Shown here piece after piece: positions 7,301 to 55,690 of a stretch of 64,000 nt of DNA. This DNA is from Ranitomeya imitator (Eukaryota). Location of the stretch: assembly GCF_032444005.1 (NCBI RefSeq), contig NC_091289.1, positions 131,254,001-131,318,000 of the forward strand. The letters are read 5' to 3'. Positions within the stretch are counted from its first letter, which is position 1, and every line of letters begins with the position of its first letter. A program made the translations under genes and the position numbers. Below the pieces are notes generated by a model that was not told where the DNA came from, did no database searches, and saw only the letters and a list, made by a program, of their open reading frames with translations.

Positions 7301-7620
7301 GAGTGGTGGAATCATGACATAAGCAATAGAAAACAAGCTTACTATTGTTTACAGATACAAAAATGCAGTCACCACTGGAAAAGAGGTTAATTAGAGTCCA
7401 ACATGTTGGGTCTGATTCAAAACTTTTATATCAGAAAAATAGCTTTGAAAGGGACTTTGAAAAGCTTTGAGTAGTTGAAATTTTTTTTCCAGAATGTGTA
7501 GTTGTGCAACAAAATTGCAACTTTTGTTGTTTTCATAATAGTTTGAATCAACTCCACAGAAATGGGCAGAGCTGGGGAAGAGCCGAGGTGGGATGGCCAA
7601 AATATAAACTAATACCTCAC

Positions 7621-7682
<62 letters not shown>
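7621..7682. repeat. (TA)n microsatellite
   Basis: Direct reading. Confidence 0.97.
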
Positions 7683-7690
<8 letters not shown>

Positions 7691-9186
7691 TTTTTGCACT
7701 TTTTTTCGGGGTGCAGTTGGGCCCATTTTTGTCTTGTAAACTGTGGTGTCTGTTCACATGGGGTGCATTTGGATAGCGCTGGGCAGGCCCGCCTGATCTA
7801 ATAGAAGGGTGTCACTACTAGGCTGTTAACCTGCATGCTGTGCATCTCCATTGTGTGAACAGTGCCACATACAAGTCTTTTATGTGCAGTAATATGCCAA
7901 GCTGCCACCCCCTCCATTAGTTTGGTAGGTTGTGAATGGTTGCCTCATTGGTAATTCTGCACCTGTGTTGCCACCATCTTAACCACATGGGTCCACTGCA
8001 TCCTGATAGTGCATTTGTTTGGAGGCCTAGGCAGGTAAGCATCTCTGCCTTTCTGCTATTTTTTCTGAATTTTTGGAGGATCCCTGAATCCTCTTTTTGT
8101 GCGTTTGCTGTTTAGTGATAGTAGGAATGCAAGCCCCGGACTGGGATCATTACAGCAGGGCGTTACTCCTAGCAACCAGGAAAATGACTGCTGTATGAAG
8201 GAGTTAAATAGGAGTGCAGCAAAGACCAGACAGATGTTGGTGGTAGGGGACTCTATAATTAGGAGGACAGACAGGGTCATCTGCCGCCGATACGGTGAAT
8301 GCCGAACTATGTGTTGTCTGTGGGTGCTTGGGTTCGACATATTGGTGATCGGATAGACAGATTGCTGGGTGGGGCTGGGTAAAACCCAGCGGTCATGGTA
8401 CACATTGGTACCAATGGCAAATTTAGAGGGAGGTGGAAGGTCCTTAAGAATGATTACAGGGAACTAGGAGAGAAGCTGAAGGACAGGACCTCCAAGGTGT
8501 TGTTTTCAGAAATACTGTCAGTGCCACGAGCGTCACTAGATAAGCAGTGGTTGGTTAGGGAGATAGGTAAGTAGCTTAGAAATTGGTGCAGGAAGAAAGA
8601 GTTTGGGTTCCTGGACAACTTCTTTGTCGGTTGCAGGCTCCACGGTATGGACGGGCTGCACCTCAATGGGGAGGGTGTAGCATTGCTTGGGGAAAAAGTG
8701 GTAAGATGGCTGGAGGAGCTTTTAAACTAGGATCTGGGGGAAGTGAGGATGGTTGTGTTAATAAGGGGATAGATAGAGTAGACCGAGAGAGTGAGACATT
8801 AGGCGTTAATGAGGATTTAGGGGGCTGGGATATGAAAGTAAAGCAGGGAGCTGAATAGGAGTAACAAATGTGCTAATAATATGAAATGTCTTCTGGCAAA
8901 TGCAAGAAGTCTAGCAAGCAAAATGGATGAACAGGAGACTCTTGTGACGGTCACAGAATACGATGTGGTGGGCATTACGGAAACCAGGCTTGATGAGAGC
9001 CATGACTGGGTAACAAACATAGAGTGTTACTCTACATTTAGAAAGGACAGGAAAGATAAAAAAGGTGACGGTGTGTGTATCTTCGTAAAATCCACATTAA
9101 AACCTGTGCTCAAAGAAGACATTGGGGGGAGTCAATCTAGAGTCACTATGGGTAAATGTACATGGGGATGGCAATATTGTAGATAA

Positions 9187-40052: not shown

Positions 40053-40853
40053 ATGCAGAAACTTCAGGAAGTTGTGATGCCTGAGCCCAAACTGGAGGAT
40101 TGGCTCAAAATCGCCACTGGTTTCAAAAATACTTGTGACTTCCCTAACTGCATTGGAGCTGTGGATGGGAAACATATCAGGGTGCGTAAGCCGCCGAACT
40201 CTGGTTCCCAATTCTACAATTACAAACAGTTTTTCTCTGTAGTTCTGTTAGCAGTTGCTGACAGTAACTACAGGTTTATAATTGTAGACATTGGGGCCTA
40301 TGGGCGAACTGGAGACTCTAGGGTCTTCAATTCGTCCATAATGGGTCGGCGGCTACGTGACAACCAGTTGAACCTCCCATCACCACAACAACTCCCAGGC
40401 TCCAATGCGGAAGCAGTGCCTTTTGTTTTTGTTGGAGATGAGGCCTTCCAACGGACGAGGCACGTCATGAGGCCTTACCCTAGGCGCAACCTTGACCACC
40501 GGCGGAGGGTGTTTAATTTGAGACTTGCAAGGGCACGGAGACTGGTTGAGTGCGCCTTTGGGATTCTTGTTGCCAAATGGCGTGTTCTTCAGTCTGCCAT
40601 CCAGCTGAGTGAGGCTACAATCAATGAAGTGTTCAAAGCCTGTGTAATTCTACATAATTTCACAAGAATACATGATTGTTCCTCTCCAAATTTTGAAGAT
40701 CACCTCATGAACAATGTTAGTAGGCCTACCCCATATGTCCCTCCTTCGCGCCGTCCACTTTCTGGTCTTAAAGTTCGTGATGTCTTTACAAATTATTTTT
40801 TGAGTCCTCAAGGTGCTACTCCCTGGCAAGACTATGCATTTTTGCATGTTTAA
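40053..40853 (+). CDS. PIF/Harbinger (HARBI1-like, DDE_Tnp_4-type) transposase, C-terminal catalytic part only
   Basis: FPNCIGAVDGKH, VGDEAF and RRLVECAFG supply D, D, E; the N-terminal part is absent. Confidence 0.9.
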   Translation: MQKLQEVVMPEPKLEDWLKIATGFKNTCDFPNCIGAVDGKHIRVRKPPNSGSQFYNYKQFFSVVLLAVADSNYRFIIVDIGAYGRTGDSRVFNSSIMGRRLRDNQLNLPSPQQLPGSNAEAVPFVFVGDEAFQRTRHVMRPYPRRNLDHRRRVFNLRLARARRLVECAFGILVAKWRVLQSAIQLSEATINEVFKACVILHNFTRIHDCSSPNFEDHLMNNVSRPTPYVPPSRRPLSGLKVRDVFTNYFLSPQGATPWQDYAFLHV

Positions 40854-41214: not shown

Positions 41215-44200
41215 TTACAAGTCCTGGTAGGTTGGTGCAGGAGATGTAGCTTGCTCAGGGTCAGCATCAGGTGGCCTTTGTAGGCCCAATTGTCCAGCAC
41301 CCTGTGCAGATGTTGTAGTGGCCTGAGGGACATTAGCCCAGCTATGATGCTGGAAAGTTTGAAGAGTGGGCCGAGGATTTGGGACATACCCCTGCTGTTG
41401 CTGACCATATGTCCGGGAATCATACCCCAACCCAAAATGACCATATTGTCCATACCCAGGTTGGGACCAGCCTCCAGCACTAGGTGAGGACAAGTGGCCA
41501 TATTGGGTTGTTTGATGATATCCAGCCATATGTTGCTGAGGTTGCCACTGTGGGTTCGTTGTGGGTTGGGGTTGAGGGGTTGGCTGACGTTGAGGGGGTG
41601 CTTCAGATCCTTGTTGAGCAGCCAGGCCTTGTAATCTCTGAAGCCGCAGAATATTTTCAGGTGACATCTGCCACTGTTCAATCATCTGCAAGAGATTGTA
41701 TGGGTTATTTGGGGGGGTGCATGCGTCAATAAGGATCTGAAAACACCCTCTCAAACGCAGCCTCAACTCCCGCTCTATGGACCTTAAGTACTGGGCAAGG
41801 CTCCTTGTAAATCCCTCCTCCCCATCATCCTCTCGAAACCGTGCCAAATAGTTCATGACCCCAGCATCAACATTTCGCCGGCTTTGGATCAGCTCTCTCC
41901 TGCGGCGTGAACGCTGTGGTCTGACTGCAGCCTGTGGGGATGGATCCAGGGCAACAGTTGGGCTGCTGCTATTTCCAGGGTCATCCTGGCTAGGTGGTGG
42001 TGCTGCTGCTGATGATGCTGCGGCGGAAGATGCAAACTCTGGGGCCTCTGGGTGTGGTTCTGATGCAGATGGAGCTGCCTGGCCAGATATGGAGGATCCA
42101 TGAGGGATGGAGCCGGAGGGAGCAGCAGATGGACCAGCCACCTCTTCACCTTCCCCAACTGGGTCAATGACCAGCTCTGACTCAGACCCTGTCTCCCTGT
42201 CAGTGAGGTTAGACTGAGTTCTGAAAACGAAAAATTTATATTTAATCAAAATTTTAATGAAAATTTGTATCAAAAGACTTAACAAAAACAGTGAGTGATG
42301 TTTGTACTTACGGCCTGAGGTCCATGCTGGGGTTAAGGAAGGTTAGGCGGTCGAAGTAGACGTATTTTCTTTTTTTAGGAGGTGCCCCGGCTCCACTTTT
42401 CTCCCGCTGCTGCCTCTCCCTCCTATACTGGTCACGGATACTCCGCCACCTTGTTGTAACATCACCCACTAAAACAACAAAAAATAAACACATTCATTAC
42501 ACCATTATGTAGATTGCTCACACAAGGTGAAATTGAATACACAGATTTAAGTGTAGCATACAAATAGGCATTTGTGGAGCACATTTAATATTAAATTTAA
42601 AAACCACACACACAATTATCAAGCAAGGCCACAAGGACAGAGTCCCCTAACCTCTATCACAGAAAAGACAATTAATGGGAAACACTGTTAGTAAGGGTAC
42701 CGTCACACAGTGCAATTTTGATCGCTACGACGGTACGATTCGTGACGTTACATCGTCGCACAATTATCGCTCCAACATCGTAGATTGCGGTCACACTTCG
42801 CAATGCACGGTGCTGAAGCGATAATTTCATGACGTATTTGCGATGTAGAAGTCGTATGGGACAGTCGTACGGTCGTGTCACACAAGACGATTCAGAGCAC
42901 ATTTTGCATAATCTGTGCGTGACGTTGTTCATTAGGGGCGTGTTGTGCTGCTAGCTAGTGTGCTGATAGGCCACAGGTTCTGTGCATACAATTGGTTGGA
43001 AAATTTGTCACCTGAGCGCTATTGTTCCCAATGCCACCTCACTGCTTTCAAAATTTCCTTTCTTCACTTCGTACTTGGACACTTGGTGGACCTGGACATC
43101 GGATTTTTGTACTTCTCAGAATATACCACGCTTTGCGCCGCAGCTTCGAGGTATGTAAACCGCTTGGGCGTGGTGGATGGAACGCTGTATGGTCAGCATG
43201 AGTGCTTCGTTCCGCCGCTGAAGCGAAGCGGATGGTACGCTGTTGTGACTGGAGGGCTACAGCGTGGCAGATGGTACGCTGTATGGTCGGCAGGAGCACT
43301 TCGTTCCGCCGCTGAAGCGAAGCGGATGGTACGTTGTTGTGACTGGTGGGCTACAGCGTGGCAAATGGAACAATGTATGGTTGGCATGAGTGCTTTGTGC
43401 GACTGCTTGTATGTATGTGGTGGTTCGCTGCGACAATGTGTGTAATGTGTTTATTGTGCGACTGCTGTAGCGAAGCGGGTGGTACGCTGTTGTGGGTTAT
43501 GATGGCCTAGGGCTAGGGCGTGGCAGGTGGAACAATGTATGTTCGGCATGAGTGCTTTGTGCAACTGCTGTAGTGAAGCGGGTGGTACGCTGTTGTGGGT
43601 TATGGTGGCCTAGGGCGTGGCAGATGGAACAATGTATGGTCGGCATGAGTGCATTGTGCGGCTGCTGTAGCCAAGCGGGTGGTACGCTGTTGTGGGTTAT
43701 GGTGGCCTAGGGCGTGGCATATGGGAAAATGAATGCTGTTTTTCAAAGTGGCGTTTGCACCTCTGTGACCTTTTTTTCTATTTTTTGTCCACCTTTCGCT
43801 GTTGCTGTTTTAATATACTATTTGTCAAACGCCTAACTTTATTTTTTTTTATTTTTACAGATGTCAAATCGTATAGAATTTATACGCGAGTTCCTGGAGA
43901 TCTACCAGTCTTTTCCATGCCTTTGGAAGATAAAATTGCCTGATTATTCAAACAGGGAAAAGCGTAAGGCCGGATATTCAAAGCTGATCGAATTATACAA
44001 TCTCCATGCACCGGAAGAGCAAGCCACAGAAACAGTAGTAAAGAAGAAAATTCAGGCGCTGCGCACGGTCTGGAGGAAGGAGCTCAATAAGGTCCTTCAC
44101 AATTCCAAGTCTGGGTCTTCAACAGAAGAGGTTTATGTCCCGAAGCTATGGTATTTTGATTACCTTAATTTTCTTCGGGACCAAGAGGTGCCACGGTCAT

Positions 44201-47200
44201 CAACGTGTTTGCGGTTGTTGGCATCCGTGGAACCGACAGTACCTCAGAACCACGTCGAGCTGGACTCACAAGGGCAACCAGTAAGTACATCTTTGCAGCA
44301 CTGTTTCACCAATGTGGCCTATAATTAAATATTATTTTTCAGCATTTTCTCCATCTGATTATACCATGAATTCGAAGTTTTATCATTTTTCTGTACAGAC
44401 CATAACCCTGTCGCAGAAAAGTATTACATGGCGACCTTCTTAACCCATACCATCTATATATAGCAACTTTTCACATGTATACGAATATATATTTTTTATG
44501 CGGTTAGGGTGGTGTACCTCGTTTCTTTTTTGTTTTTAATATTTTCCTTTTTTATTTTCTCCCTAGGAGGAGAGTGCACAGGACAGTGGACAGGACAGTG
44601 CACAGGACAATGCACAGGACTGCTCCACAAGTCAAATAGTGGAGGCTGCACCTGCACGGAGTCAATGGAGGCAGGGTTCAAGGAAGCGGAAAGCCACCTC
44701 GGACGTCTCCCATGAACTGTTGAGCATGGCCAAAAATGTGTTGACGCGCAAAACCAGCCCTGCTTTGGAGGGTTTTGGACTCTACATCGCTGATAAACTT
44801 TCTACAATGGAAGCAAGGCAGCGAACTTTAACCGAGCGTCTTATTTTTGAGGCTGTTAGTAAGGGATTGGATGGCAGTTTGGATGAAAACACACGGTTGG
44901 TTTCTTCCCGTCCAATCGAGCGGCCAGAGTCCGCATATTGTCCACCATATTGGCCACAAACACCATTACGGCCCAATTTCCCCGTGTCCCACTTTGGCCC
45001 GTCACCCCAAAACTCATACCCGACAATGCCGTCTCACATTTCTTCGCCCATCAGGCACCTTCATGTTCGCAACGAAGATTCGGTGTATCACGATTTGTGA
45101 TTTTTTTTTTTTGTTTTCTTACGGATTTTTAAATTGTAATGTTGTTAAGAATTGGTTCATAATAAAAACTTTTCATTTAACTTCACTCTCAACAGCTTGA
45201 TTGGTGGGATATATATATATATTTTTAAAGTAACAAACTTTTTTTAGCTGTACAACACACAACCAAAAATGTTCAGACACTTGGTTTCTATTTTGGCCCC
45301 GCCGCCAACTGTTGGCACATGTCCCGAAGCTTCTGCAGCTCCCCCATTGCCACATTCTGCTGCTCCTGAATCCGCGCCATAGTGTGGATAAGCCTTTCTA
45401 TTCCGGCTTCCAGATCCTCCTTGTTCACACTGACGTCAGCTGTGGGTCAAAAAACATAACATTAATAACACAGTAGTCTCCCGATGTGTCTTTGCTTCTG
45501 TGAAGGAAAAAAACAAAACTGTCAGCATATATGGCAATACTGACTGCGGGGGGGGGGGGAGGGGGGAGGGGGGAGGGTTTGGGGGTGAAAGAGGGGGCCT
45601 GCAACCAAATCAAAATCACTTTATTGTGGGAACCTACTAGGATGTTGAGGCACGGAGGGCACTTCGGGATCAGAGTCCGTGTCGAATGCCTCGTGCTGTC
45701 GGCGGCGGCGCTGTTTCTTTGCCTCTGTGAAGGTTAAAAAAAAAAAAGGTCTGTCAGCATATATGGCAACACTGGCTGCCGGGGGAGGGGGGGGGGGGAA
45801 GAGGGGACCTGCAACCAAATCCAAATCACATTATTGTGGGAACCTACTAGGATCTGGAGGAGTTGAACCTGAGGGCTCTGGGACATCAGAGGCGGTGTGT
45901 GATGCCTCGTGGCGGCGGCGCTGTGTCTTTGCATCTGTGAAGGGAAAAAAAAAAAAAAAAAAAGGTCTGTTAGCATATATGGCAACACTGGCTGCCGGGG
46001 GAGGGGAGGGGGAAAGGGGACCTGCAACCAAATCCAAATCACATTATTGTGGGAACCTACTAGGATCAGTTGTCGTTGACCCGGAGGGCACTGATCCAGA
46101 AGAGGCTGTGCGGGATGCCTCGTGGCGGCGGTGCTGTGTCTTTGCCTCTGTGAAGGAAAAAAAAAAAGGTCTGTTAGCATATATGGCAACACTGGCTGCC
46201 GGGGGGGGGAAGGGGACCTGCAACCAAATCCAAATCACATTATTGTGGGAACCTACTAGGATCAGTTGTCGTTGACCCGGAGGGCACTGGGACAGTTGAC
46301 CCGGAGGGCACAGATCCAGAAGAGGCTATGCGGGATGCCTCGTGGCGGCGGCGCTGTCTCTTTGCCTCTGTGAAGGAAAAAAAAAAGTTCGGTCAGCAGT
46401 TAGCTGTGCCACATAGTACTTTTCACCGTTCATATTGCCCCAAAGCTGTGGCACATAGTGGCTCTGCAACGTTCAAACTGTCCCATAGCTGTGCCACATA
46501 GTGGCTCTGCAACGTTCAAACTGCCCCATAGCTGTGGCACATAGTGGCTCTGCAACGTTCAAACTGTCCCATAGCTGTGCCACATAGTGGCTCTGCAACT
46601 TTCAAACTGCCCCATAGCTGTGCCACATAGTGGCTCTGCAACGTTCAAACTGTCCCATAGCTGTGGCACATAGTGGCTCTGCAACGTTCAAACTGTCCCA
46701 TAGCTGTGCCACATAGTGGCTCTGCAACGTTCAAACTTCCCCAAAGCTGTGGCACATAGTGGCTCTGCAACGTTCAAACTGTCTCATAGCTGTGGCACAT
46801 AGTGGCTCTGCAACGTTCAAACTGCCCCATAGCTGTGCCACATACTTTTGGGTACCTGCGTACTGACCTCTGCGACTCTTCTGGCGAAGCTCCTGCAGGC
46901 GCTCTGGGCTTTTGGACTTGAGATCGCCCCATTTTTTAACAATCTGGGCCTTGCTGCGAGTTATCCCAAACCGCTTCCTGAGGCCCTCAGACACCACACG
47001 GACAACTTCCTCCTTGTGCTGGTTGCGGTGCAGCACCAGCCCTGTTGTTTCGTACTGCATCCGATCCATTGTTCCAATAAGGAACTTGAGCTCTGGGATG
47101 CCCATAGGAGGATCACGGCGACTGGCAGCCATTATCAGGATGTCAGGGAACCAAAACAAGCTAGCGCAGGCACGCCGGAACGCTGTAACGTCATCACGCC

Positions 47201-50200
47201 GTCATAGACCACGAGCGTACATTACGTGCCGCTCCGGCGTTATATAACCATCCTTCGAACGGCATTTACTATGTGCGTTCCTTCCGTACCGCTCAGCCGT
47301 CACAAATGTGACGCTGTCCATAAACGGCAACGCTATTGCGATGCCGATCGTGCGGCAGGACGGCGGAGTCAAGCTCCTCCTCTGGGCATTGACGTTCAGG
47401 GTCATTCAATCTAAAATGGCGGCGAGATTGCGTTCTGCTCCTCTGGGGCAGCCAGAGCTCCTTTTTTTTGTTAGCAAGATGGATGCCCTGGATTATGAGG
47501 GTCTGGAGAGTCGGCCTGCCCACCCAAACATCCACAAGCGGGAAGTGCTTGGCCGCATTAGCAGAATGATGAAGAGGAGGTTTGGCGTCCACCGCAGTCA
47601 GCTTCAGCTGCGGAAAAAGTGGGCTGACCTCCGCTACAAAACGCCACAAATGTTTGCTGAGTTGCGTGCGGAGGCAAGGCGAGGCAAGTACTAGTATGGG
47701 GGGATTGGGAGATGCATGGTGTCAGGAGGGGGGGGGGATTGGGAGGGAGGCTTGCACTCATGGTTGCCAACGTGACCTCAAATGAATTTAAAAACATGCC
47801 CCGTTTTTGTAAAATTTAGTTATTTTCCAAGCAGAATATGCGTTGTCCGTGAGAAAACTTGTCGGGTTCCCTAATCTCAACCACCATCTTGAAATTATTA
47901 AGATGTCCGTAATTTTTAGTTTCTCAATTTACCAAAAATATTATCTGAGGAGGTTGGCCTACAGATGAAATAATACGTTTTCCAAAGACAGGCAGACCAT
48001 TGAACACCAGAGCCCACAGACATGTCAGAGTATCGCACCCCTGTAAAGTGTGATCTCTATTTTATGTTTCAGTATATTGTAAGCTTTGATCTGCAGCACT
48101 CAACATTTGTGTGTAAACATTGTGATTCTTTACTTTAGGTGTAGAGAGACAGCGGCGGCAAGTGATACCAGCCATTGCCACCAGTACCCCATCTTCTGAC
48201 ACCAGTGGGAGCCCACAGTCCGGGACATCACGTAAGTTCACAATCATTGATTGCATTTTTTTTAACATCATACGGGACATAACAGGGTAGCTGAAATATT
48301 TGAAGACATTACCGGCGCAGTAATGACCAGGCGGCCTACCACACCTCCACCATCTGTTGCGACCATGCACCCTCGCACCCCTGTGAAGTGTGATATAAAT
48401 TTTCAGTTTCAGTATATTGTTAGCTTTGATCTGCAGCACTCTACATCTGTTTTTAAAGATTGCGTTTGTTTACTTTATGTGTAGAGAGACAGCGGCGGCA
48501 ACGGATACCAGCCATAGCCAGCAGTACCACACCTTCCGCCACGAGTGGGAGCCCAGAGCCCGGGACGTCACGTAAGTTAACAATCATTGATTGCAATTTT
48601 TTTGTACCTGCATACGTGTCATAAGAGGGTTGCGGAAATATTTGAATACATTTCAGACGCAGTAATGACCCAGCGGCCTACCACGCCTCCACCATCTTTA
48701 GAGAGCAGGCGGCCTCGCACCCCTACACCACCCTCAACACCTCCCTTCCGCCACTCTTCTTCCTCCCCCGGGTCGGCGGCATTCTCCCCAGAAGCTAACA
48801 TACGTAAGTGACCAAAACAGCGAGCGCTTCACAACGGCGTGTTCCATAGTTAACCAGATCTGTTATTATTTCCTTTTAGGTGCTGCAGCAGTGGCCAGAT
48901 CTCTGGGATGGGAAATTAGCAGCTCTGGTTCTGGCAATGAGGAACCGGCGTCCCTTCTCCGTAAGTATCAAGATAATACGAGTGGTTTTCTGCTGGATGT
49001 CACAATAGACAACTAAAACTGTAAAATTTAATAAAATAAACATCGCCCTGTGGGGCCAGACCAAATTGAAATTTACAACACACTAAATTTGGTCCTGCCC
49101 CAGAGGTCGAGATGTATTTTCAGCGGAATCACCGTTAGTTCTCCAACCTCTTCTATCCACAGAACCATCCACCGTGAGAGAGCTCATGGCGAGACAATTG
49201 CGCCTGGAGCGGACAGCAGCGCTCCTGCAGCAGACAGCAGCGCTCCTCCAGGCTCAAGTAGAGCAGCAGGGCGTGACGCTGCAACACCTGTTGGGCCGTG
49301 GAAGGAGATAATTTTTTTTTTTTTGGTTATGTAATATTTTGTTGTTAAATAGTTAAATACCAAGAAATTGTTACAAAAAAACAAAAAATCTTCGCATTCT
49401 TTCTTTAATGTTTACCGAGCTATGAGGGTTAACAGCACCATTTTATAGGCATCTCATTTAAAGTAATTTAGAGAGGTTTATATGATTTAAAATACGATTA
49501 TGTGTGGGTAAACCATTGATTGGGTGCATGCATGGCAGAGCTTGAAATGGAAGGAAGTCGCCATTTGACTTTGGAATGCAATCTAGACCGATCGCTGTAA
49601 CGTACTATCCCGTCAATGGGGATTATCGAGTCACAGGACACCTTGACGGAATAGGACGTCATATGAGTTGCCCACTTTATCTAAACTGAACAACCAAGAA
49701 TTACGGGAGTAATAAATACAATTTAATTTTATTACACAAAAGACAGTGACCTACTCGCCATATTAAATTGTGGACACGAAAGCATAACCTACATATTGTT
49801 GAGTAAACAGCAAAGCAAAAAGAAATATTTTTTTATACGGCGCGATCCTGCCAGGGTACAGCTCCAGAACCATTAAAGTACTGACAGTATTTTTCGCGAC
49901 AGTCCCTTGCATCGTCTGCCTGTCTGCCAGATCCAAGTGCTTGAAGAGCTGTTAAATTATCAGGTTGTGTACGCCATTCCCCGGGCACAATATCTCCGGT
50001 TCTTGGGTCCACTGCATCAATAAACGAAGGAGGAGAATAGGAGCTCGTATCATGACGTCTCAGGAAATTATGGAGCACACAGCATGCCAAAACCACAAAG
50101 TCTATAGACGGCAGCTTCAAGTTGATAGCTGTGTGGAACACTCTAAACCAATTCGCCATAATCCCAAAGGCATTTTCAACCACACGACGGGCCCTCGACA

Positions 50201-52666
50201 ACCGGTAATTATAGATTCTGCGCTCCGGTGTGAGTGTTCTCTGCGCAAATGGCTTCAGCAAATGTGGATGAAGAGGGAAAGCTTCGTCTGCGATGAAAAC
50301 AAAATTGAGGTTTGCTTTTGTGTCTTCATTTAGTGGCAACTGCAGTTGATTGTTCCTCAAGCTTTCCCCAAATGAAGTGTGTTCAAAAACTCCACCGTCG
50401 GAGACTCGACCATTCATGCCAACATCCACATCGACGAACTCATAGTTCGCATTGACAAGGGCCATGAGGATCACACTGAAATATCCTTTGTAGTTGAAAA
50501 AAAAGGATCCAGAGTTGGCTGGTTGCGTGATGCGCACATGCTTTCCATCTAATGCACCACCGCAGTTTGGAAACTGCCACAGCTCATCAAAATCGGAAGC
50601 AATCCTCTTCCAGTCATCCGCCGTCTTGGGAAACTGCAAAATGAGAAGGAAACATGTACAAATTAGGTCAAATATATTGTTGTGCACATACACTCTCATG
50701 TGGACATCCTAGAGTGATTGAGGCGCAGTATGGATTAGTATAACAAAGTCAACAGCCCTGAGTATGCAGGCAGCCATTTTATCAGATGGCTTCGGTGACT
50801 GAGAGGGGGTGCTAAACAATATATCGAAATTATATAATCAATAAAATAACGTTGGGAGCAGCAAATAAAAGAAGGGTGGCGCAGGGTTGGAGCACCACAT
50901 ATCAGAATGGAGCCGCAAAATGGTTGCATCACATGTCAGAATGGAGGCGCAGGATCACAGCAGCACATGTCAGAATGGGGGCGCAGGATGGGAGCAGCAC
51001 ATGATAGGATGTAGAACATATACCAATAGAAATGCGCGCAACCAGGGTGTAGAACGGGTTAAATAGCTAGTATAATATATCGACATAACACAGCAGCCAA
51101 AAAAATATAGTAGTACCTCGATATAATGCCTTAAGCTCTGCACAATGGCCTCGCATGTCTCCGGAATCACAACGCTCAGGAAAGGTCTGGAAACAGCTGC
51201 GGAAAACTGCAAATCCTGAAGAGACCTTCCTGTTGCCAGGAACCGCAGTGTCACCGCCAACCTTTCATCCACGGGCACGGCTGCACGCATCGGCGTATCA
51301 CGCCTTTGTATGAGTGGCGTAACAGCGGACAGTATTATTTTGAAGGATTCCTCTGACATCCGAAGGTAGTTTCGGAAATCATGAGGGTTATTGTCACGTA
51401 ACTCTCTTATGAGACCCATGTGTGACAATGTGGATCTTTTCTGCAGCCAGCTCCGGGTCCACATGCGACGTTTTCGTTTAGGACGTCTCTCCTCTTGGAG
51501 ACGTGCTGCCTCAAACACCAGGGCAGCAGCAACAACAGAACTCTCATCGGAAGTGAGCATACTTCCTAAAAAGAAAACAAACGTACAATAAATACACGTG
51601 CTTACAAAACAATGTTTTGACCATTGATCTAATAACTATATATGTTACTACTGGCATTAAATGGGGCAGTCAACCATCTCGATCTGTAAAAGGATTAATT
51701 AATTGGGCCACGCTACAGCTGTGTACCTGAGGTTCTCTGGCCTACCCTACTCTCCATAAAGGAACAATCGACCACGCTCCAGCGTTTATCCCCGTTGAAG
51801 CGCAACATCTGCTACGCTGTAGCGTTATACATACCTTTTGCGGTAAAAGTCTGTAGTTATAGTAGTTATAAAAGTCCAGGGAATCCAGCGAATTTAGGAG
51901 TTCTGTTTCCAGCACGTGCTACAGAGAGAAATGAATAGAGCGCTCGACAGCTCCGGTTTTATCCGCTGGGAACAATAGTCCTTTGTTTGTCGAATGAGCG
52001 CACAGTATTGTACCGCCCAATCAGCACACGGGAGGTGGAGAATTTAGCGCTCCTACGTAGCCAGCTCCTCCGCCCTTTACATCGTATACAATATCGTGCA
52101 CACCTTTGTTACACTATGCGATCATGCCGCCACAGCGGGACACTAGACGACGAAAGAAAGTTTCAAACGATGTGCTACGACGTACGATTCACAGCGGGGT
52201 CCCTGATCGCAGAAGCGTGTCACACACTGCGATATCGTAACTATATCGCTCGAACGTCACAAATCGTGCCGTCGTAGCGATCAAAATTGCACTGTGTGAC
52301 GGTACCCTTAGGGACACCTATTCAAAACATTAATGAAATCCTTTTATCAGGTACAACACCATGTATCTACTGGTGTGCTTTCTAGTTCTTTCATGAATAT
52401 TTAAGACATTCTTGATGATAAATTATAAGTAGTAAAGGCCTGCTGTTTCACAAGAACATTACATTTCAAACATGGGTGTACTTACTTATCTGTCGTTGTG
52501 CCTCACGTGGCTGCTGGTCATAATGTGGGAAGAGGGACCCACAGACACTCCTCCATGCAGCCTCTTTTTGTGCCCTGTTGGCATAATTTGGGTCTCTTTG
52601 GTCCCAGATGACAGGCCTCCCTTGGACCAAAATTATCAGCATGTCCGTATTGACAATGTTTGCCAT
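41215..52666 (-). CDS. Outer-element MADF protein, about 447 aa; exons 52666-52486, 42468-42312, 42220-41215
   Basis: GT-AG junctions join in frame (..QRQI-M-GDVTTRWRSIRDQY.. and ..DLR-P-TQSN..), rebuilding a MADF domain; BESS-like helix and Q/G/Y-rich tail. Confidence 0.8.
43160..43720. repeat. Degenerate ~70-80-bp tandem repeats upstream of the inner MADF ATG
   Basis: GAAGCGG(A/G)TGGTACGCTGTTGTG..GCGTGGCA..TGGAACAATGTATG..GGCATGAGTGC recurs about 6 times. Confidence 0.85.
43861..45100 (+). CDS. Inner MADF protein, about 317 aa; exons 43861-44280 and 44567-45100
   Basis: FLEIYQSFPCLWKIK..YSNREKR..KKKIQALRTVWRKEL..YVPKLWYF; phase-0 intron GTAAGT..CCCTAG joins both track ORFs; BESS-like FGLYIADKL. 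Confidence 0.85.
45288..47132 (-). CDS. Myb/SANT-like plus coiled-coil protein A, about 262 aa; exons 47132-46868, 46367-46257, 46147-46061, 45934-45848, 45724-45638, 45439-45288
   Basis: RFGITRSKAQIVKKWGDLK; all predicted introns are GT-AG phase 1; internal exons of 111/87/87/87 nt keep the frame to a TAG; heptad-like last exon. Confidence 0.75.
46402..46845. repeat. 43-bp minisatellite (about 10 units) in intron 1 of Myb gene A
   Basis: AGCTGTG recurs at 46444, 46487, 46530 and onward to 46831. Confidence 0.95.
47133..47415. promoter_or_regulatory. Putative bidirectional promoter between the two Myb genes
   Basis: 283-bp CpG-rich spacer between divergent ATGs; several ACGT/TGACG motifs. 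Positional inference only. Confidence 0.5.
47416..49311 (+). CDS. Myb/SANT-like plus coiled-coil protein B, about 258 aa; exons 47416-47683, 48139-48231, 48657-48803, 48880-48960, 49124-49311
   Basis: RFGVHRSQLQLRKKWADLR; exon lengths 268+93+147+81+188=777 nt give an open frame to TAA; first donor is GCAAGT, the others GTAAGT. Confidence 0.75.
49833..51560 (-). CDS. Intact PIF/Harbinger transposase, about 414 aa; exons 51560-51117 and 50633-49833
   Basis: N-terminal FRNYLRMS..ERLAVTLRFLATG; phase-0 GT-AG intron; catalytic GALDGKH, FIADEAF, VENAFG. Confidence 0.92.
50707..51070 (+). mobile_element. Possible small Helitron-like insert in the transposase intron
   Basis: Ends ..GAACGGGTTAAATAGCTAG|T after GCAGCACATG repeats; the hairpin is imperfect and the 5' end is a guess. 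Confidence 0.35.
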
Positions 52667-53300
52667 GCTGAATATCACTCCGTGGAGGTGTGCAGCAGAC
52701 TTCCGGGTTCACTGTCCGGCTTTTTCAGCTAATTAGCATGTCTCACCTGCCTGATTGAGTCCTTTGGACATTTCCGGACATCTGCCAGTCAGTTGCGTAT
52801 TTCTCGCAAGGCACACGCATGGTCCGTATGCATTCCGTATTATACGCTCTCCCATAGACTTGCATTGGCGTATTTTTTGAGCGATACGCTGACAAACGCA
52901 GCATGCTGCGATTTTGTGCGACCGTAGAACACCGTATATTACGGATCCGTTATATACGGCTGATAGGACTAGACCCATTGAGAATCATTGTGCCGTATGT
53001 TATGCGAGTTTTACGGACGTAGTTTCTGCGCTCTTACGTCCGTAAAACTCGCAAGTGTGATGCCGGCCACATACTGTGTACATAGCAGTGTATTTCTATC
53101 AATATCATCTGCTCGTGAAGTCAGCGCCTGCAACACAGATCAAGTACACAAAATGCTCTCATTTACATCAGCAGAGCTTGTGGCTCAGTAGCTTAAGTCT
53201 CTGTCTATAATGTTAAGATTGTGGTTTAGAGACATGAGGAGACTCACAGAAAACAAAATGAAGTTTTTGTAATTGCTTAAGCCCGAACAAAAAAAAAAAA

Positions 53301-55690
53301 TAATAATAATAATAATTTTTATTTATATAGCGCCAACATATTCCGCAGCGCTTTACAAATTATAGAGGGGACTTGTACAGACAATAGACATTACAGCATA
53401 ACAGAAATACAGTTCAAAACAGATACCAGGAGGAATGAGGGCCCTGCTCGCAAGCTTACAATCTATGAGGAAAAGGGGAGACACGAGAGGTGGATGGTAA
53501 CAATTGCTTTAGTTATTCGGACCGGCCATAGTGTAAGGCTCGGGTGTTCATGTAAAGCTGCATGAACCAGTTAACTGCCTAAGTATGTAGCAGTACAGAC
53601 ACAGAGGGCTATTAACTGCATAAAGTGAATGAGAACATGATGCGAGGAACCTGTTTTTTTTTATTTATTTTTTTATATATAAATAGGCCACACAGGGATC
53701 GTTAGGTTAATGCATTGAGGCGGTAGGCCAGTCTGAACAAGTGAGTTTTTAGGGCATGCTTAAAACTGTGGGGATTGGGGATTAATCGTATTAACCTAGG
53801 TAGTGCATTCCAAAGAATCGGCGCAGCACGTGTAAAGTCTTGGAGACGGGAGTGGGAGGTTCTGATTATTGAGGATGCTAACCTGAGGTCATTAGCGGAG
53901 CGGAGGGCACGGGTAGGGTGGTAGACTGAGACCAGAGAGGAGATGTAGGGTGGTGCAGAGCCATGGAGTGCTTTGTGGATGAGGGTAGTAGTTTTGTACT
54001 GGATTCTGGAGTGGATGGGTAGCCAGTGTAATGACTGGCACAAGGTAGAGGCATCGGTGTAACGGTTGGTGAGGAATATGATCCTGGCAGCAGCATTCAG
54101 GACAGATTGGAGTGGGGAAAGTTTGGTAAGAGGGAGGCCGATTAGTAGAGAGTTACAATAGTCCAGACGAGAATGAATAAGTGAAACAGTAAGAGTTTTT
54201 GCAGAGTCGAAAGTAAGAAAAGGGCGAATTCTAGAAATGTTTTTGAGATGCAGGTAAGAAGAGCGAGCCAGTGATCGAATGTGGGGGGTGAATGAAAGGT
54301 CAGAATCAAGGATGACCCCAAGGCAGCGGGCATGTTGCTTTTGAGTAATGGTGGAACTGCACACGGAGATGGCAATGTCAGGCAAAGGTAGGTTAGTAGA
54401 GGGAGAGAACACGAGGAGTTCAGTTTTTGACAGGTTTAGTTTCAGATAGAGGGAGGACATGATGTTAGAGACAGCGGTAAGACAATCACTGGTGTTTTCT
54501 AAAAAGGTCGGCGTGACAACAGGAGAAGAGGTGTATAATTGGGTGTCGTCAGCATATAGATGGTACTGGAAACCAAATCTACTGATTGTTTGTCCAATAG
54601 GGGCAGTATACAACGAGAAGAGGAGGGGGCCTAGGACTGATCCTTGAGAAACCCCAACAGTAAGGGGAAGGTGAGAGGAGGAGTGTTAGGTCTCGAGTTC
54701 CCACTTCTGCACAGGGGGAATCTCGAGCCATCTCCGCTGCGGTCTCCCATTCTTATCCAGCCGCAGTGGAGTCTGCTCAGCAGGGACGTCGGTCCCAGCG
54801 TCTTGCTCAGTCTCACTCTGTACAGAGAGTTACTGCTGCTTCTTCAGGTTCTGCCATTAAAGCCAGTGCTGGTCAGCAGCGAGCAGACTTCTCTGGGACT
54901 AAGTCCTTGTCTGCACACACTGAGCATGCCCAGAGCAAGATCTCCCGGTGGAGATCGAGGGTCATGTGCTCAGGCCCTGCAGCACATTCCATTGGTCCTC
55001 TTGGCAGGTCTTGGAAGGGCAAAGTTTTTGTGGCCACTTCCTGTGCTGCAACTATATAAACTGCGCATGACCGCACGGCCATGCGCTAGTGTACATTTGC
55101 TTACGTGTGTTTGTTGTGAGTGCAAGTCGTCCTTGGATACCCCTTCCCTATTGAATGTCTGTTTGCGGAAGGTGTATGGTTGCTATCTAGCGCCCGACTT
55201 ATCCTACAGCACAAATCACACATTTCAGCGTCCAGTTGCTGTGACCGCCAGTACGGCGCCGTGCACTTCCTCTGTGCTTTCCTTATCCAAGCCTGGGTGG
55301 TTAGTGGCGTTCGTCAGTGCGGCACCGCATGCACTCTTGTGCCCTAAATATTGTTATTTTCCTTACACACCCAGTTGCGGTGTTGTGCCAGCAAGGGTCT
55401 AATCGGACTTCAATCCTAGTTGGGGTTGAGTTCGCTGACTACTTGCTCGCGCTCTATGTGCGGTACCGCGACCCTGTGACGCAACAGGATCGCTTCCTTC
55501 ACGCTGGGTGAAGTCTAACCCACGTGTGCATACTTATGAGTACCGCCATATAGTCCGTCATTACTTGGCAGCAGGTTCCATCTCTGCACGGTGGACCCCG
55601 GGCTGCGAACGCACCATACTCTATCTGTATCATTATTTGGTGCGTTCCGCTAGCCCTAACAAGGAGGAACCAGCAAAACAATAGGAAACA
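53301..55690 (-). mobile_element. 5'-truncated L2-clade LINE; RT C-terminal ORF 53702-54613
   Basis: [43 protein letters not shown]; (ATT)n tail at 53301; interrupted by a solo LTR. Confidence 0.92.
54684..55661. mobile_element. Solo LTR (second family) inserted in the L2 RT
   Basis: TGTTAGG..CCTAACA ends; perfect 5-bp TSD AGGAG (54679-54683, 55662-55666). Confidence 0.92.

What the first reader, a model, noticed from the sequence alone, without database searches (positions are those of the whole stretch)
42695..52307. Four-gene Harbinger transposon: transposase, MADF and two extra Myb/SANT-coiled-coil paralogs
Seen: one TIR pair encloses MADF(+), MybA(-), MybB(+) and transposase(-), arranged as two convergent pairs, with 15 predicted coding exons that all join in frame. 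Known: PIF/Harbinger elements normally carry two genes, a DDE nuclease and one Myb/MADF partner, and domesticated relatives act in chromatin regulation. Inference: the two added proteins may serve in target selection, complex assembly or anti-silencing. I am not aware of this layout being described but cannot search.
Basis: partly seen in the sequence, partly recalled or inferred. Interest (0 to 1): 0.85.

Follow-up and report, generated by a model that had tools for sequence, protein, structure and literature searches.

The report
Four-gene Harbinger transposon in poison frog
This is a young, complete Harbinger jumping gene of a Ranitomeya poison frog that carries four working-looking genes instead of the textbook two, because a frog-specific lineage of these transposons acquired a third DNA-binding-type gene long ago and duplicated it here.

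Summary
Window 42695-52307 is one PIF/Harbinger DNA transposon with 58-nt terminal inverted repeats (56 of 58 match).

It holds four intact spliced genes:
- a DDE_Tnp_4 transposase (2 exons, 414 aa, 96-97% identical end to end to R. imitator protein clusters of 74 and 8 members);
- a MADF gene (2 exons);
- two head-to-head paralogs, MybA and MybB (6 exons each, all introns phase 1). Each encodes a NAIF1/MSANTD-type Myb domain, a disordered Ser/Pro/Arg linker and a C-terminal leucine-zipper helix.

RNA-contig joints and NCBI gene models support most junctions. No repeats or duplications bound the Myb pair.

The Myb family is found only in frogs. It lies beside Harbinger transposase and/or MADF genes in R. 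imitator and Anomaloglossus. In Xenopus laevis it sits inside a three-gene element with its own inverted repeats and a TAA duplication. So the third gene is old in this lineage, and the fourth most likely arose by inverted duplication in the poison-frog lineage.

Not tested: function, dN/dS and a copy census.

The scan already reported this element type elsewhere in this genome (s1-294663, s1-274988). I found no paper describing it. I rate it a new variant of a known kind.

The parts
42695..42749 (+). Left terminal inverted repeat; the tip reads GGGTACCGTCACAC. It is preceded by TAA (42692-42694).
   Evidence: (58 nt, 97% complementary, counted with the flanking TAA/TTA).
52253..52307 (-). Right terminal inverted repeat, followed by TTA (52308-52310).
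43168..43735 (.). Left subterminal tandem arrays (94-bp unit x2.4 and 97-bp unit x2.9) upstream of the MADF gene. A 21-nt motif from them recurs once, inverted, at 51799-51819 near the right end. This is a candidate binding-site array and is unproven.
   Evidence: Tandem Repeats Finder; pair I6; 3 matches against 0.01 expected.
43861..45100 (+). MADF gene, 312 aa. Exons 43861-44280 and 44582-45100.
   Evidence: Pfam MADF_DNA_bdg E 9.4e-15. Frame intact. An RNA contig joins about 44281 to about 44580 (X10 record 9). 51% identical to the MADF gene of the X. laevis element. A BESS motif was not detected by Pfam.
45288..47132 (-). MybA gene, 262 aa. Exon 1 is 46868-47132 (Myb domain). Four tandem-unit exons follow: 46257-46367, 46061-46147, 45848-45934 and 45638-45724. 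The last exon is 45288-45439 (leucine-zipper helix). All introns are GT-AG and phase 1.
   Evidence: The RNA joint 45638>45439 is seen in 3 runs. The Myb domain is 86% identical to R. imitator XP_069617890 (P0001); the whole protein is 56%. Heptad register.
46401..46844 (.). 43-bp minisatellite (10.3 copies) in MybA intron 1.
47133..47415 (.). 283-bp spacer between the divergent MybA and MybB start codons. Presumed shared promoter region (inferred).
   Evidence: RNA contigs of about 94% identity span it together with both first exons (records 5, 20 and 26).
47416..49311 (+). MybB gene, 274 aa. Exons: 47416-47683 (Myb domain, GC donor), 48139-48231 (48145 is an alternative in-frame start), 48485-48571, 48657-48803, 48880-48960, and 49163-49311 (leucine-zipper helix). 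All introns are phase 1.
   Evidence: GT..AG RNA joints 48231>48485, 48571>48657 and 48803>48880. 94% identical over exons 3-6 to R. variabilis P0223 and 86% over exons 2-6 to R. imitator P0224.
49833..51560 (-). Transposase gene, 414 aa. Exons 51117-51560 and 49833-50633. DDE residues appear to be present by eye.
   Evidence: Pfam DDE_Tnp_4 E 3.5e-31. The model aligns over residues 1-414 at 96-97% to R. imitator P0100 and P0101, clusters of 74 and 8 members. 61% identical to the X. laevis element's transposase.

Best explanation
Window 42695-52307 is a young, apparently autonomous cut-and-paste DNA transposon of the PIF/Harbinger superfamily. It belongs to a frog-restricted lineage whose standard gene set is three genes, not two: a DDE transposase, a MADF protein, and a protein I call 'Myb-cc'. 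Myb-cc has an N-terminal NAIF1/MSANTD-type (Myb_DNA-bind_5-like) trihelix domain, a disordered Ser/Pro/Arg-rich linker with basic clusters, and a C-terminal leucine-zipper helix.

In the poison-frog lineage (Ranitomeya) the Myb-cc gene was most likely duplicated in inverted orientation. The two copies then diverged to 44% identity in the Myb domain and acquired different tails. This gives the four-gene layout MADF> <MybA MybB> <transposase.

Likely mechanism (inferred, not shown): the transposase cuts at the inverted repeats and inserts at TWA sites. MADF and Myb-cc are sequence-specific DNA-binding partners that recognise subterminal sites and bring the transposase to the ends and into the nucleus, as the single Myb-like partner does in zebrafish Harbinger3_DR. 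The zipper tails let Myb-cc dimerise, here possibly as an A-B heterodimer, which would help pair the two ends.

Shown: the anatomy, intact frames, splicing of most introns, the fold class of the Myb domain, and recurrence of the gene set within terminal repeats in distant frogs.
Inferred: every functional role.
For: - Ends and uniqueness.
- Domains: 42 of 48 family members hit PF13873 at E<=0.1; the Bufo member passes Pfam's threshold for PF13873 with 44 bits.
- Fold: the AF2 model of the MybA domain has four helices. Its 16 best Swiss-Prot AFDB matches are all MSANTD3, NAIF1, TSNARE1 or MSANTD4, with probability 0.91-0.98, TM 0.59-0.67 and human NAIF1 at rmsd 2.8 A. These are the known Harbinger-Myb-derived genes (PMC9392472).
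- Architecture: a MybB-type ortholog folds as a helical domain, a disordered middle and one long C-terminal helix at residues 188-224. Both tails show a heptad register with 10 hydrophobic a/d positions.
- Gene models: all frames are open, spliced RNA joints exist, and independent NCBI models match.
- The pair is not nested: no inverted or direct repeats at its borders.
- Recurrence in gene neighbourhoods: R. imitator has transposase, a 2.7-kb gap, MybA and MADF in the same order and strands as here. Two Anomaloglossus loci have a transposase followed by Myb on the same strand; the third gene is a MADF gene at the P0005 locus and a 156-aa gene with no Pfam hit at the P0007 locus. Two further R. 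imitator loci have Myb convergent with MADF.
- X. laevis: the element L001:6427-12188 has TIRs and TAA on both sides and holds transposase, MADF and one Myb-cc gene. Its transposase is 61% and its MADF 51% identical to ours, against 41% for the unrelated two-gene Harbinger next door.
- Other copies keep the pair: RNA contigs at about 94% identity from three studies span MybA exon 1 through MybB exon 1 without gaps.
- Tree: MybA, MybB and the dendrobatoid three-gene-type Myb form one clade (SH-aLRT 92), apart from the Xenopus, Hyperolius and Bufo types.
- Range: 78 clusters, and every named one is anuran.
Against: - No functional data exist.
- dN/dS could not be computed, because no DNA of other copies could be fetched. 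The few listed differences in RNA contigs are 5 synonymous to 13 non-synonymous, which is not distinguishable from neutrality.
- The window's own Myb domains miss Pfam's cut-offs, and Foldseek E-values are weak at 0.4-1.
- MybB is not called as a gene at the other fully annotated R. imitator locus; there is only a gap of the right size.
- MybB intron 1 (GC-AG) and MybA intron 1 lack a clean RNA joint.
- RNA contigs also cover introns and the spacer, so part of the signal is unspliced RNA or DNA. The contigs cannot be assigned to this copy.
- The flanks TAA and TTA are not an identical duplication.
- The candidate subterminal binding motifs are only weakly supported.
Confidence: 0.8

Rival explanations
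1. The Myb-cc proteins are carried and selected by the transposon, but they are regulators, not core transposition cofactors. They might act as dominant inhibitors or titrators of the transposase, as anti-silencing or chromatin-directed factors, or as targeting factors. In that case MADF alone would be the true partner.
For: A neighbouring Harbinger of another family in this window has only a transposase plus MADF and no Myb-cc. Two genes suffice in all described Harbingers (PMC13668399). Family members have been fused to KRAB repressor boxes in Bufo and Phyllobates, and relatives of this domain class are host chromatin or transcription factors. The linker exons evolve fast and vary in number.
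Against: NAIF1-type Myb proteins are the proven transposase partners in vertebrate Harbingers (Sinzelle 2008, as cited in PMC9392472 and PMC13668399). The gene has stayed linked to the transposase across Xenopus and the dendrobatoids. Nothing here tests the activity either way.
Confidence: 0.3
2. Only one Myb-cc paralog is functional. The other, most likely MybA with its unstable tandem-exon tail, is a recent redundant duplicate drifting toward loss, and its open frame simply reflects the youth of the copy.
For: MybA-type proteins were found only in Ranitomeya. The tandem exons vary in number and sequence between copies. An RNA joint 45790>47242 in two runs suggests copies with most of MybA deleted. 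A hybrid between the A and B types is annotated in R. variabilis.
Against: The MybA and MybB Myb domains are only 44% identical, yet both keep the family's near-invariant residues and complete six-exon frames. The duplication is therefore old relative to the age of this copy. Both types are present in two Ranitomeya species. The MybA last intron is spliced in three RNA runs.
Confidence: 0.15
3. The Myb pair is a passenger: either a separate nested element or captured host genes, with no relation to the Harbinger that surrounds it.
For: Nested insertions do occur here: the whole element itself sits inside the intron of another Harbinger's MADF gene. Pfam does not recognise the Myb domains directly.
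Against: There are no terminal repeats or duplications at the borders of the pair, only poly-T matches. Homologs are linked to Harbinger transposase and MADF genes in three frog families, including inside one TIR/TSD-bounded Xenopus element. The domain is of the Harbinger Myb-like class.
Confidence: 0.05

Closest known systems
Harbinger3_DR of zebrafish (two-component system: transposase plus Myb-like protein; Sinzelle et al. 2008, as cited in PMC9392472 and PMC13668399)
   Same: It has a DDE_Tnp_4/HARBI1-like transposase, terminal inverted repeats, a TWA-type target, and a separate gene for a NAIF1-class Myb/trihelix protein.
   Different: The element here also has a MADF gene and two diverged copies of the Myb gene. 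Each Myb gene has a multi-exon disordered linker and a C-terminal zipper. That makes four genes in 9.6 kb.
PIF/Harbinger elements with a MADF partner (insects: PMC9710019; Caenorhabditis Turmoil/Harbinger-1M_cIno: PMC13668399)
   Same: A transposase plus a MADF-domain protein lie inside one TIR pair, with TTA/TAA targets.
   Different: Those elements carry only these two genes. The frog lineage adds the NAIF1-type Myb-cc gene or genes.
Domesticated vertebrate genes NAIF1, MSANTD3, MSANTD4 and TSNARE1 (PMC9392472)
   Same: They are the best structural matches of the MybA domain, and the domain is N-terminal in most of them (in TSNARE1 it aligns at residues 119-206). Pfam family PF13873 is hit by most relatives.
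   Different: Those are single-copy host genes without ends or a transposase. Sequence identity is only 12-19%. The frog proteins sit inside mobile elements.
Three-gene Harbinger of Xenopus laevis (L001:6427-12188; a locus fetched here, noted earlier in the scan as s1-274988)
   Same: It has the same three gene families inside one TIR pair. Its transposase is 61% and its MADF 51% identical to ours, and its Myb-cc belongs to the same family.
   Different: It has one Myb-cc gene only, and the order differs: the transposase and MADF genes are interleaved on opposite strands and Myb-cc lies downstream. It is 5.8 kb and has a perfect TAA duplication.

Membership tests
PIF/Harbinger superfamily of DNA transposons | Transposase of the DDE_Tnp_4 (HARBI1/PIF) type | tested here: met
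   Pfam PF13359 E 3.5e-31. The nearest named relatives are annotated 'putative nuclease HARBI1'.
PIF/Harbinger superfamily of DNA transposons | Terminal inverted repeats enclosing the genes | tested here: met
   58 nt, 56 of 58 complementary, unique in the window.
PIF/Harbinger superfamily of DNA transposons | 3-bp target-site duplication, TWA | tested here: inconclusive
   The left flank is TAA and the right flank is TTA. Both are TWA but they are not identical. The Xenopus relative has TAA on both sides.
PIF/Harbinger superfamily of DNA transposons | A second gene for a Myb/SANT/MADF DNA-binding partner | tested here: met
   MADF E 9.4e-15, plus two NAIF1-type Myb genes.
PIF/Harbinger superfamily of DNA transposons | Canonical two-gene content | tested here: not met
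   Four intact genes. Papers give two as canonical (PMC13668399).
Pfam Myb_DNA-bind_5 (PF13873; NAIF1/MSANTD type) | Score at or above Pfam's gathering threshold (21.7 bits) | tested here: inconclusive
   The window's MybA and MybB show only weak Myb_DNA-bind_4 hits. Of 48 family members, 42 hit PF13873 at E<=0.1. X. laevis P0089 scores 19.8 bits. Bufo P0014 scores 44 bits and passes.
Pfam Myb_DNA-bind_5 (PF13873; NAIF1/MSANTD type) | Helical trihelix-like fold matching NAIF1/MSANTD | tested here: met
   The top 16 Swiss-Prot AFDB hits are MSANTD3, NAIF1, TSNARE1 and MSANTD4, with TM 0.59-0.67 and probability 0.91-0.98. E-values are weak and the model's pLDDT is 72. The best PDB TM-scores are to the Zeste and GT-1 DNA-binding domains and are not significant.
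Frog Myb-cc family (defined here) | N-terminal Myb domain, disordered linker and C-terminal amphipathic helix; linked to Harbinger transposase and/or MADF genes | tested here: met
   Linkage was seen at 6 of the 9 loci whose neighbours could be read.

The most novel reading that the evidence does not exclude
Frog Harbingers have evolved a transposition machine with more than two components. A leucine-zipper Myb protein of the NAIF1 class is an obligatory third subunit beside the transposase and MADF. In Ranitomeya it has split into an A/B heterodimer, with each half recognising different subterminal sites so that the two ends are told apart and paired. This would be a natural example of a eukaryotic DNA transposon increasing the complexity of its transpososome, and a living model of how HARBI1-NAIF1-type host modules are assembled.
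Probability: 0.25. Interest if true: 0.78.

Novelty: new variant of a known kind. Interest (0 to 1): 0.62.

Why it matters
PIF/Harbinger elements are the textbook two-gene DNA transposons. They are also the source of several vertebrate host genes (HARBI1, NAIF1, the MSANTD genes, TSNARE1) and of the plant genes ALP1 and ALP2.

A lineage that has kept three genes from Xenopus to poison frogs, and four in Ranitomeya, shows that the partner repertoire of a DNA transposon can grow and diversify while the element stays mobile. The family looks young and abundant, with about 80 near-identical annotated transposases, so a living system may be available to ask two questions: what a second and third DNA-binding partner contribute, and how such partners are later domesticated. 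KRAB-Myb fusions of this same family already exist in toads.

It also matters for annotation. NCBI currently names these transposon genes as 'serine/arginine repetitive matrix protein 2-like', 'anion exchange protein 3-like' and 'histone H3.v1-like'.

Tried and rejected
- **Nested-element reading.** I searched the borders of the Myb pair (45050-45300 against 49300-49850) for inverted or direct repeats and found only poly-T matches. Rejected.
- **Other copies in the window.** The terminal 31-mer and the 450-700-bp ends match nothing else in the 64 kb. A six-frame profile search finds no further Myb-cc.
- **DNA of other frog copies.** Three look-ups failed because only the longest isoform is on record. 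So I could not make a census or measure dN/dS.
- **Selection from RNA-contig differences.** The counts were 5 synonymous and 13 non-synonymous. The exon-versus-spacer contrast is unreliable because the table is truncated (300 differences are not shown). Left as inconclusive.
- **Solved-structure sequence search.** The family profile found nothing meaningful. Foldseek against the PDB found no significant match.
- **BESS motif.** I suspected one by eye in the MADF protein tail, but Pfam does not detect it. Not claimed.
- **Ends of the outer Harbinger.** None found.
- **Rfam.** No RNA family anywhere in the window.
- **Subterminal motif GTCACAC.** It occurs 5 times in the two ends against once in the 8.5-kb interior. 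The 8-mer form is not enriched window-wide. Kept only as a weak lead.
- Full-length MybA and MybB proteins of the window could not be passed to the search tools because spliced products have no reference. I therefore skipped exact look-ups of those products in transcript assemblies.
Full report
**Observation**

The region holds a perfect-looking element. The arms 42692-42749 and 52253-52310 are 58 nt long and 97% complementary. The 31-nt tip occurs only at these two places in the window, where none is expected by chance. The element proper starts at GGGTACCGTCACAC (42695) and ends at its complement (52307). The flanks are TAA on the left and TTA on the right. Both fit the TWA target of PIF/Harbinger elements, but they are not an identical duplication, and I could not resolve why. 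Pfam finds a MADF domain at 43861-44328(+) with E 9.4e-15, and DDE_Tnp_4 at 49833-50699(-) with E 3.5e-31.

**Gene models**

I built models from open frames, splice signals, RNA joints and homologs.

- **Transposase(-).** Exons 51117-51560 and 49833-50633, 414 aa. It aligns over residues 1-414 at 96-97% with the R. imitator proteins P0100 and P0101.
- **MADF(+).** Exons 43861-44280 and 44582-45100, 312 aa.
- **MybB(+).** Exons 47416-47683, 48139 (or 48145)-48231, 48485-48571, 48657-48803, 48880-48960 and 49163-49311, 274 aa.
- **MybA(-).** Exon 1 is 46868-47132. Four exons lie in 213-bp tandem units (46257-46367, 46061-46147, 45848-45934, 45638-45724). The last exon is 45288-45439. The product is 262 aa.

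All Myb introns are phase 1. All are GT-AG except MybB intron 1, which needs a consensus GC donor.

**Expression and splicing**

Thirteen public runs (nine listed as probable RNA, four of unknown kind) hold 11-27% of the sampled words of 45200-49400. I laid the contigs of four runs from four studies on 43850-49849. They gave these joints:

- the MADF intron (one contig joins about 44281 to about 44580);
- MybB introns 48232-48484, 48572-48656 and 48804-48879, all GT..AG;
- the last MybA intron, 45638>45439, which is GT..AG on the minus strand and is seen in three runs.

The first module of MybB has a decayed second exon that transcripts skip. MybB intron 1 and MybA intron 1 have no clean joint. 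Contigs also cover introns and the spacer, so part of the signal is unspliced RNA or DNA. Contigs range from 90% to over 99% identity, so they come from a family of copies and cannot be assigned to this one.

NCBI gene models give independent support. R. variabilis P0223 is 94% identical to my MybB exons 3-6. R. imitator P0224 is 86% identical to exons 2-6, including the exon 2-3 junction. P0220 is a full MybB-type protein. P0001 and P0009 are MybA-type proteins of R. imitator.

**What the two Myb proteins are**

Their first exons are 44% identical. A profile search of 1.84 billion cluster representatives finds only 78 clusters. Every cluster that carries a name is from a frog: Ranitomeya, Phyllobates, Anomaloglossus, Xenopus, Hyperolius or Bufo.

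The window's own domains miss Pfam's cut-offs, but several lines place them:

- 42 of 48 family members hit Myb_DNA-bind_5 (PF13873) at E<=0.1, and a Bufo member passes the threshold with 44 bits.
- The AF2 model of the MybA domain (pLDDT 72) has four helices.
- Its sixteen best matches in the Swiss-Prot AlphaFold set are all MSANTD3, NAIF1, TSNARE1 or MSANTD4. Probabilities are 0.91-0.98, TM by query is 0.59-0.67, and human NAIF1 aligns at rmsd 2.8 A. Foldseek E-values are weak, 0.4-1.
- These are exactly the host genes that PMC9392472 derives from Harbinger Myb-like genes.
- The language-model atlas also puts PF13873 and TSNARE1 clusters first.

A MybB-type ortholog folds as a confident helical domain (residues 12-95), a disordered middle, and one long C-terminal helix at 188-224. 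Both window tails have a heptad register with 10 hydrophobic a/d positions, VLLIALL in MybA and QLLLLQL in MybB. The linkers are Ser/Pro/Thr/Arg-rich, and MybA's linker has basic clusters.

So the element carries both known classes of Harbinger partner: MADF, and the NAIF1-type Myb in two diverged copies.

**Is the pair a passenger?**

No inverted or direct repeats other than poly-T lie at its borders. The gene family travels with Harbinger genes elsewhere:

- At another R. imitator locus the order and strands are transposase, a 2.7-kb gap, MybA, then MADF. This is exactly as here, with the gap where MybB would lie uncalled.
- In Anomaloglossus baeobatrachus, two loci have a transposase followed by Myb on the same strand. 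The third gene, on the opposite strand, is a MADF gene at the P0005 locus and a 156-aa gene with no Pfam hit at the P0007 locus.
- Two further R. imitator loci have Myb convergent with MADF.
- P0224 fuses a piece of MADF exon 2 to MybB exons 2-6. This needs MADF and MybB on one strand, as they are here.
- RNA contigs at about 94% identity from three studies run without gaps from MybA exon 1 through the spacer into MybB exon 1. A diverged copy or subfamily therefore keeps the head-to-head pair.

In Xenopus laevis I could read the DNA (L001). TIRs starting AGGTGGCCATACA, at about 6427 and 12188, are flanked by TAA on both sides. They enclose a transposase, a MADF gene interleaved with it on the other strand, and one Myb-cc gene. 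Its transposase is 61% and its MADF 51% identical to ours. The unrelated two-gene Harbinger next door in this window is only 41% identical.

In the domain tree, MybA (with P0001), MybB and the dendrobatoid three-gene-type Myb form one clade (SH-aLRT 92) that is unresolved inside and separate from the Xenopus, Hyperolius and Bufo types.

The simplest history is this. A frog Harbinger lineage has long carried three genes, and in dendrobatoids the Myb-cc gene was duplicated in inverted orientation. MybA keeps the ancestral position and strand. MybB keeps the ancestral type of tail.

**Age and abundance**

The TIRs differ at 2 of 58 positions and all four frames are open. The closest transposase clusters hold 74 and 8 distinct annotated sequences at 90% identity or more in R. 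imitator. The family is young and numerous, and plausibly still active, although activity is not shown.

**Mechanism (inferred)**

By analogy with Harbinger3_DR, I expect the transposase to cut and paste at the TIRs, and the DNA-binding partners to bind subterminal sites and recruit or import the transposase. The zipper tails suggest dimerisation, possibly of A with B.

Candidate binding sites are the left arrays at 43168-43735. A 21-nt motif from them recurs, inverted, about 500 bp from the right end. The motif GTCACAC occurs five times in the ends against once in the interior, but this support is weak.

A regulatory role (inhibition, anti-silencing or targeting) is equally untested, and I give it 0.3.

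**What could not be done**

The visible differences in RNA contigs are 5 synonymous and 13 non-synonymous, which is uninformative. The argument for selection is therefore qualitative. Two six-exon paralogs have diverged to 44% identity in the domain while keeping open frames, the family's near-invariant residues and the same architecture, as do relatives in frogs as distant as Xenopus.

**Literature and earlier scan notes**

Five full-text searches found no description of a Harbinger with three or four genes. Recent papers state two genes as canonical (PMC13668399, PMC9392472, PMC9710019). Repbase could not be searched.

Within this scan, the same kind of element was already reported on other DNA of this genome: s1-294663 (four genes) and s1-274988 (third gene, also in Xenopus). 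My tests agree with both. I reached the Xenopus element through my own profile search, and I add three things: the NAIF1-class fold assignment, the gene-order comparison, and the inference that the fourth gene arose by an inverted duplication.

**Verdict**

It is a new variant of a known kind, of moderate to high interest to transposon biologists. The functional reading remains open.

Noticed in passing
window 40053-40853(+), 41215-42285(-), 42308-42493(-), 52466-52678(-): The four-gene element is itself inserted in the intron of a MADF gene on the minus strand. The N-terminal MADF exon is at 52466-52678, the C-terminal MADF exon at 42308-42493, and the tail at 41215-42285. That gene lies tail to tail with a second Harbinger transposase ORF (40053-40853), which is 41% identical to ours. 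So this is a Harbinger nested in an older two-gene Harbinger of another family. I could not find the ends of the outer element.
   Followed up: partly
window 45439-46367: In the 213-bp tandem exon-plus-intron units of MybA, the intron parts are 97-100% identical between the first three units, while the exon parts are only 79-97% identical. Exons diverging faster than their introns suggests either diversifying change of the linker or homogenisation or constraint of the intron sequence. The number and sequence of these exons also differ between copies (P0001 and P0009).
   Followed up: partly
P0098, P0099, P0224, P0014, P0006 (proteins of R. variabilis, R. imitator, Bufo bufo and Phyllobates terribilis): Several annotated proteins are mosaics. 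P0098 joins an A-type Myb domain to a B-type tail. P0224 joins a piece of MADF exon 2 to MybB exons 2-6. P0099 joins an acidic host-like N-terminus to the MybA tail. Bufo P0014 (also present in B. gargarizans) has a KRAB box plus two Myb_DNA-bind_5 domains, and Phyllobates P0006 has KRAB plus Myb. These may reflect exon shuffling helped by the all-phase-1 introns, read-through transcripts, or domestication. NCBI product names for these transposon genes are misleading (for example SRRM2-like, anion exchange protein 3-like, histone H3.v1-like).
   Followed up: partly
L001 6427-12188 (Xenopus laevis, CM030341.1): In the Xenopus three-gene element the transposase and MADF genes are interleaved on opposite strands. 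The last MADF exon (7460-7924) lies in transposase intron 1, and transposase exons 2-3 (8061-8869) lie in the MADF intron.
   Followed up: partly
window 42692-42694 and 52308-52310: The flanking trinucleotides are TAA and TTA, not an identical duplication. TTAG occurs just left of the TAA (42688-42691) and again at the right flank (52308-52311). Possible causes are a point change, or recombination between two copies.
   Followed up: no
window 44450-44649 and 46450-46849: RNA-contig word depth is very high over the 12-bp repeat at the start of MADF exon 2 (44568-44620; 160-2000x) and over the 43-bp minisatellite in MybA intron 1 (up to 720x). These repeats are probably present in many transcribed places in the genome.
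   Followed up: no
window 45790-47242: A joint that skips 1451 bases (45790>47242) appears in two runs. It suggests deletion derivatives that lack most of MybA.
   Followed up: no
window 53702-54613(-): A 303-aa ORF with a reverse-transcriptase-like motif (YADDT), judged by eye, lies just right of the outer Harbinger region. It looks like a non-LTR retrotransposon fragment.
   Followed up: no
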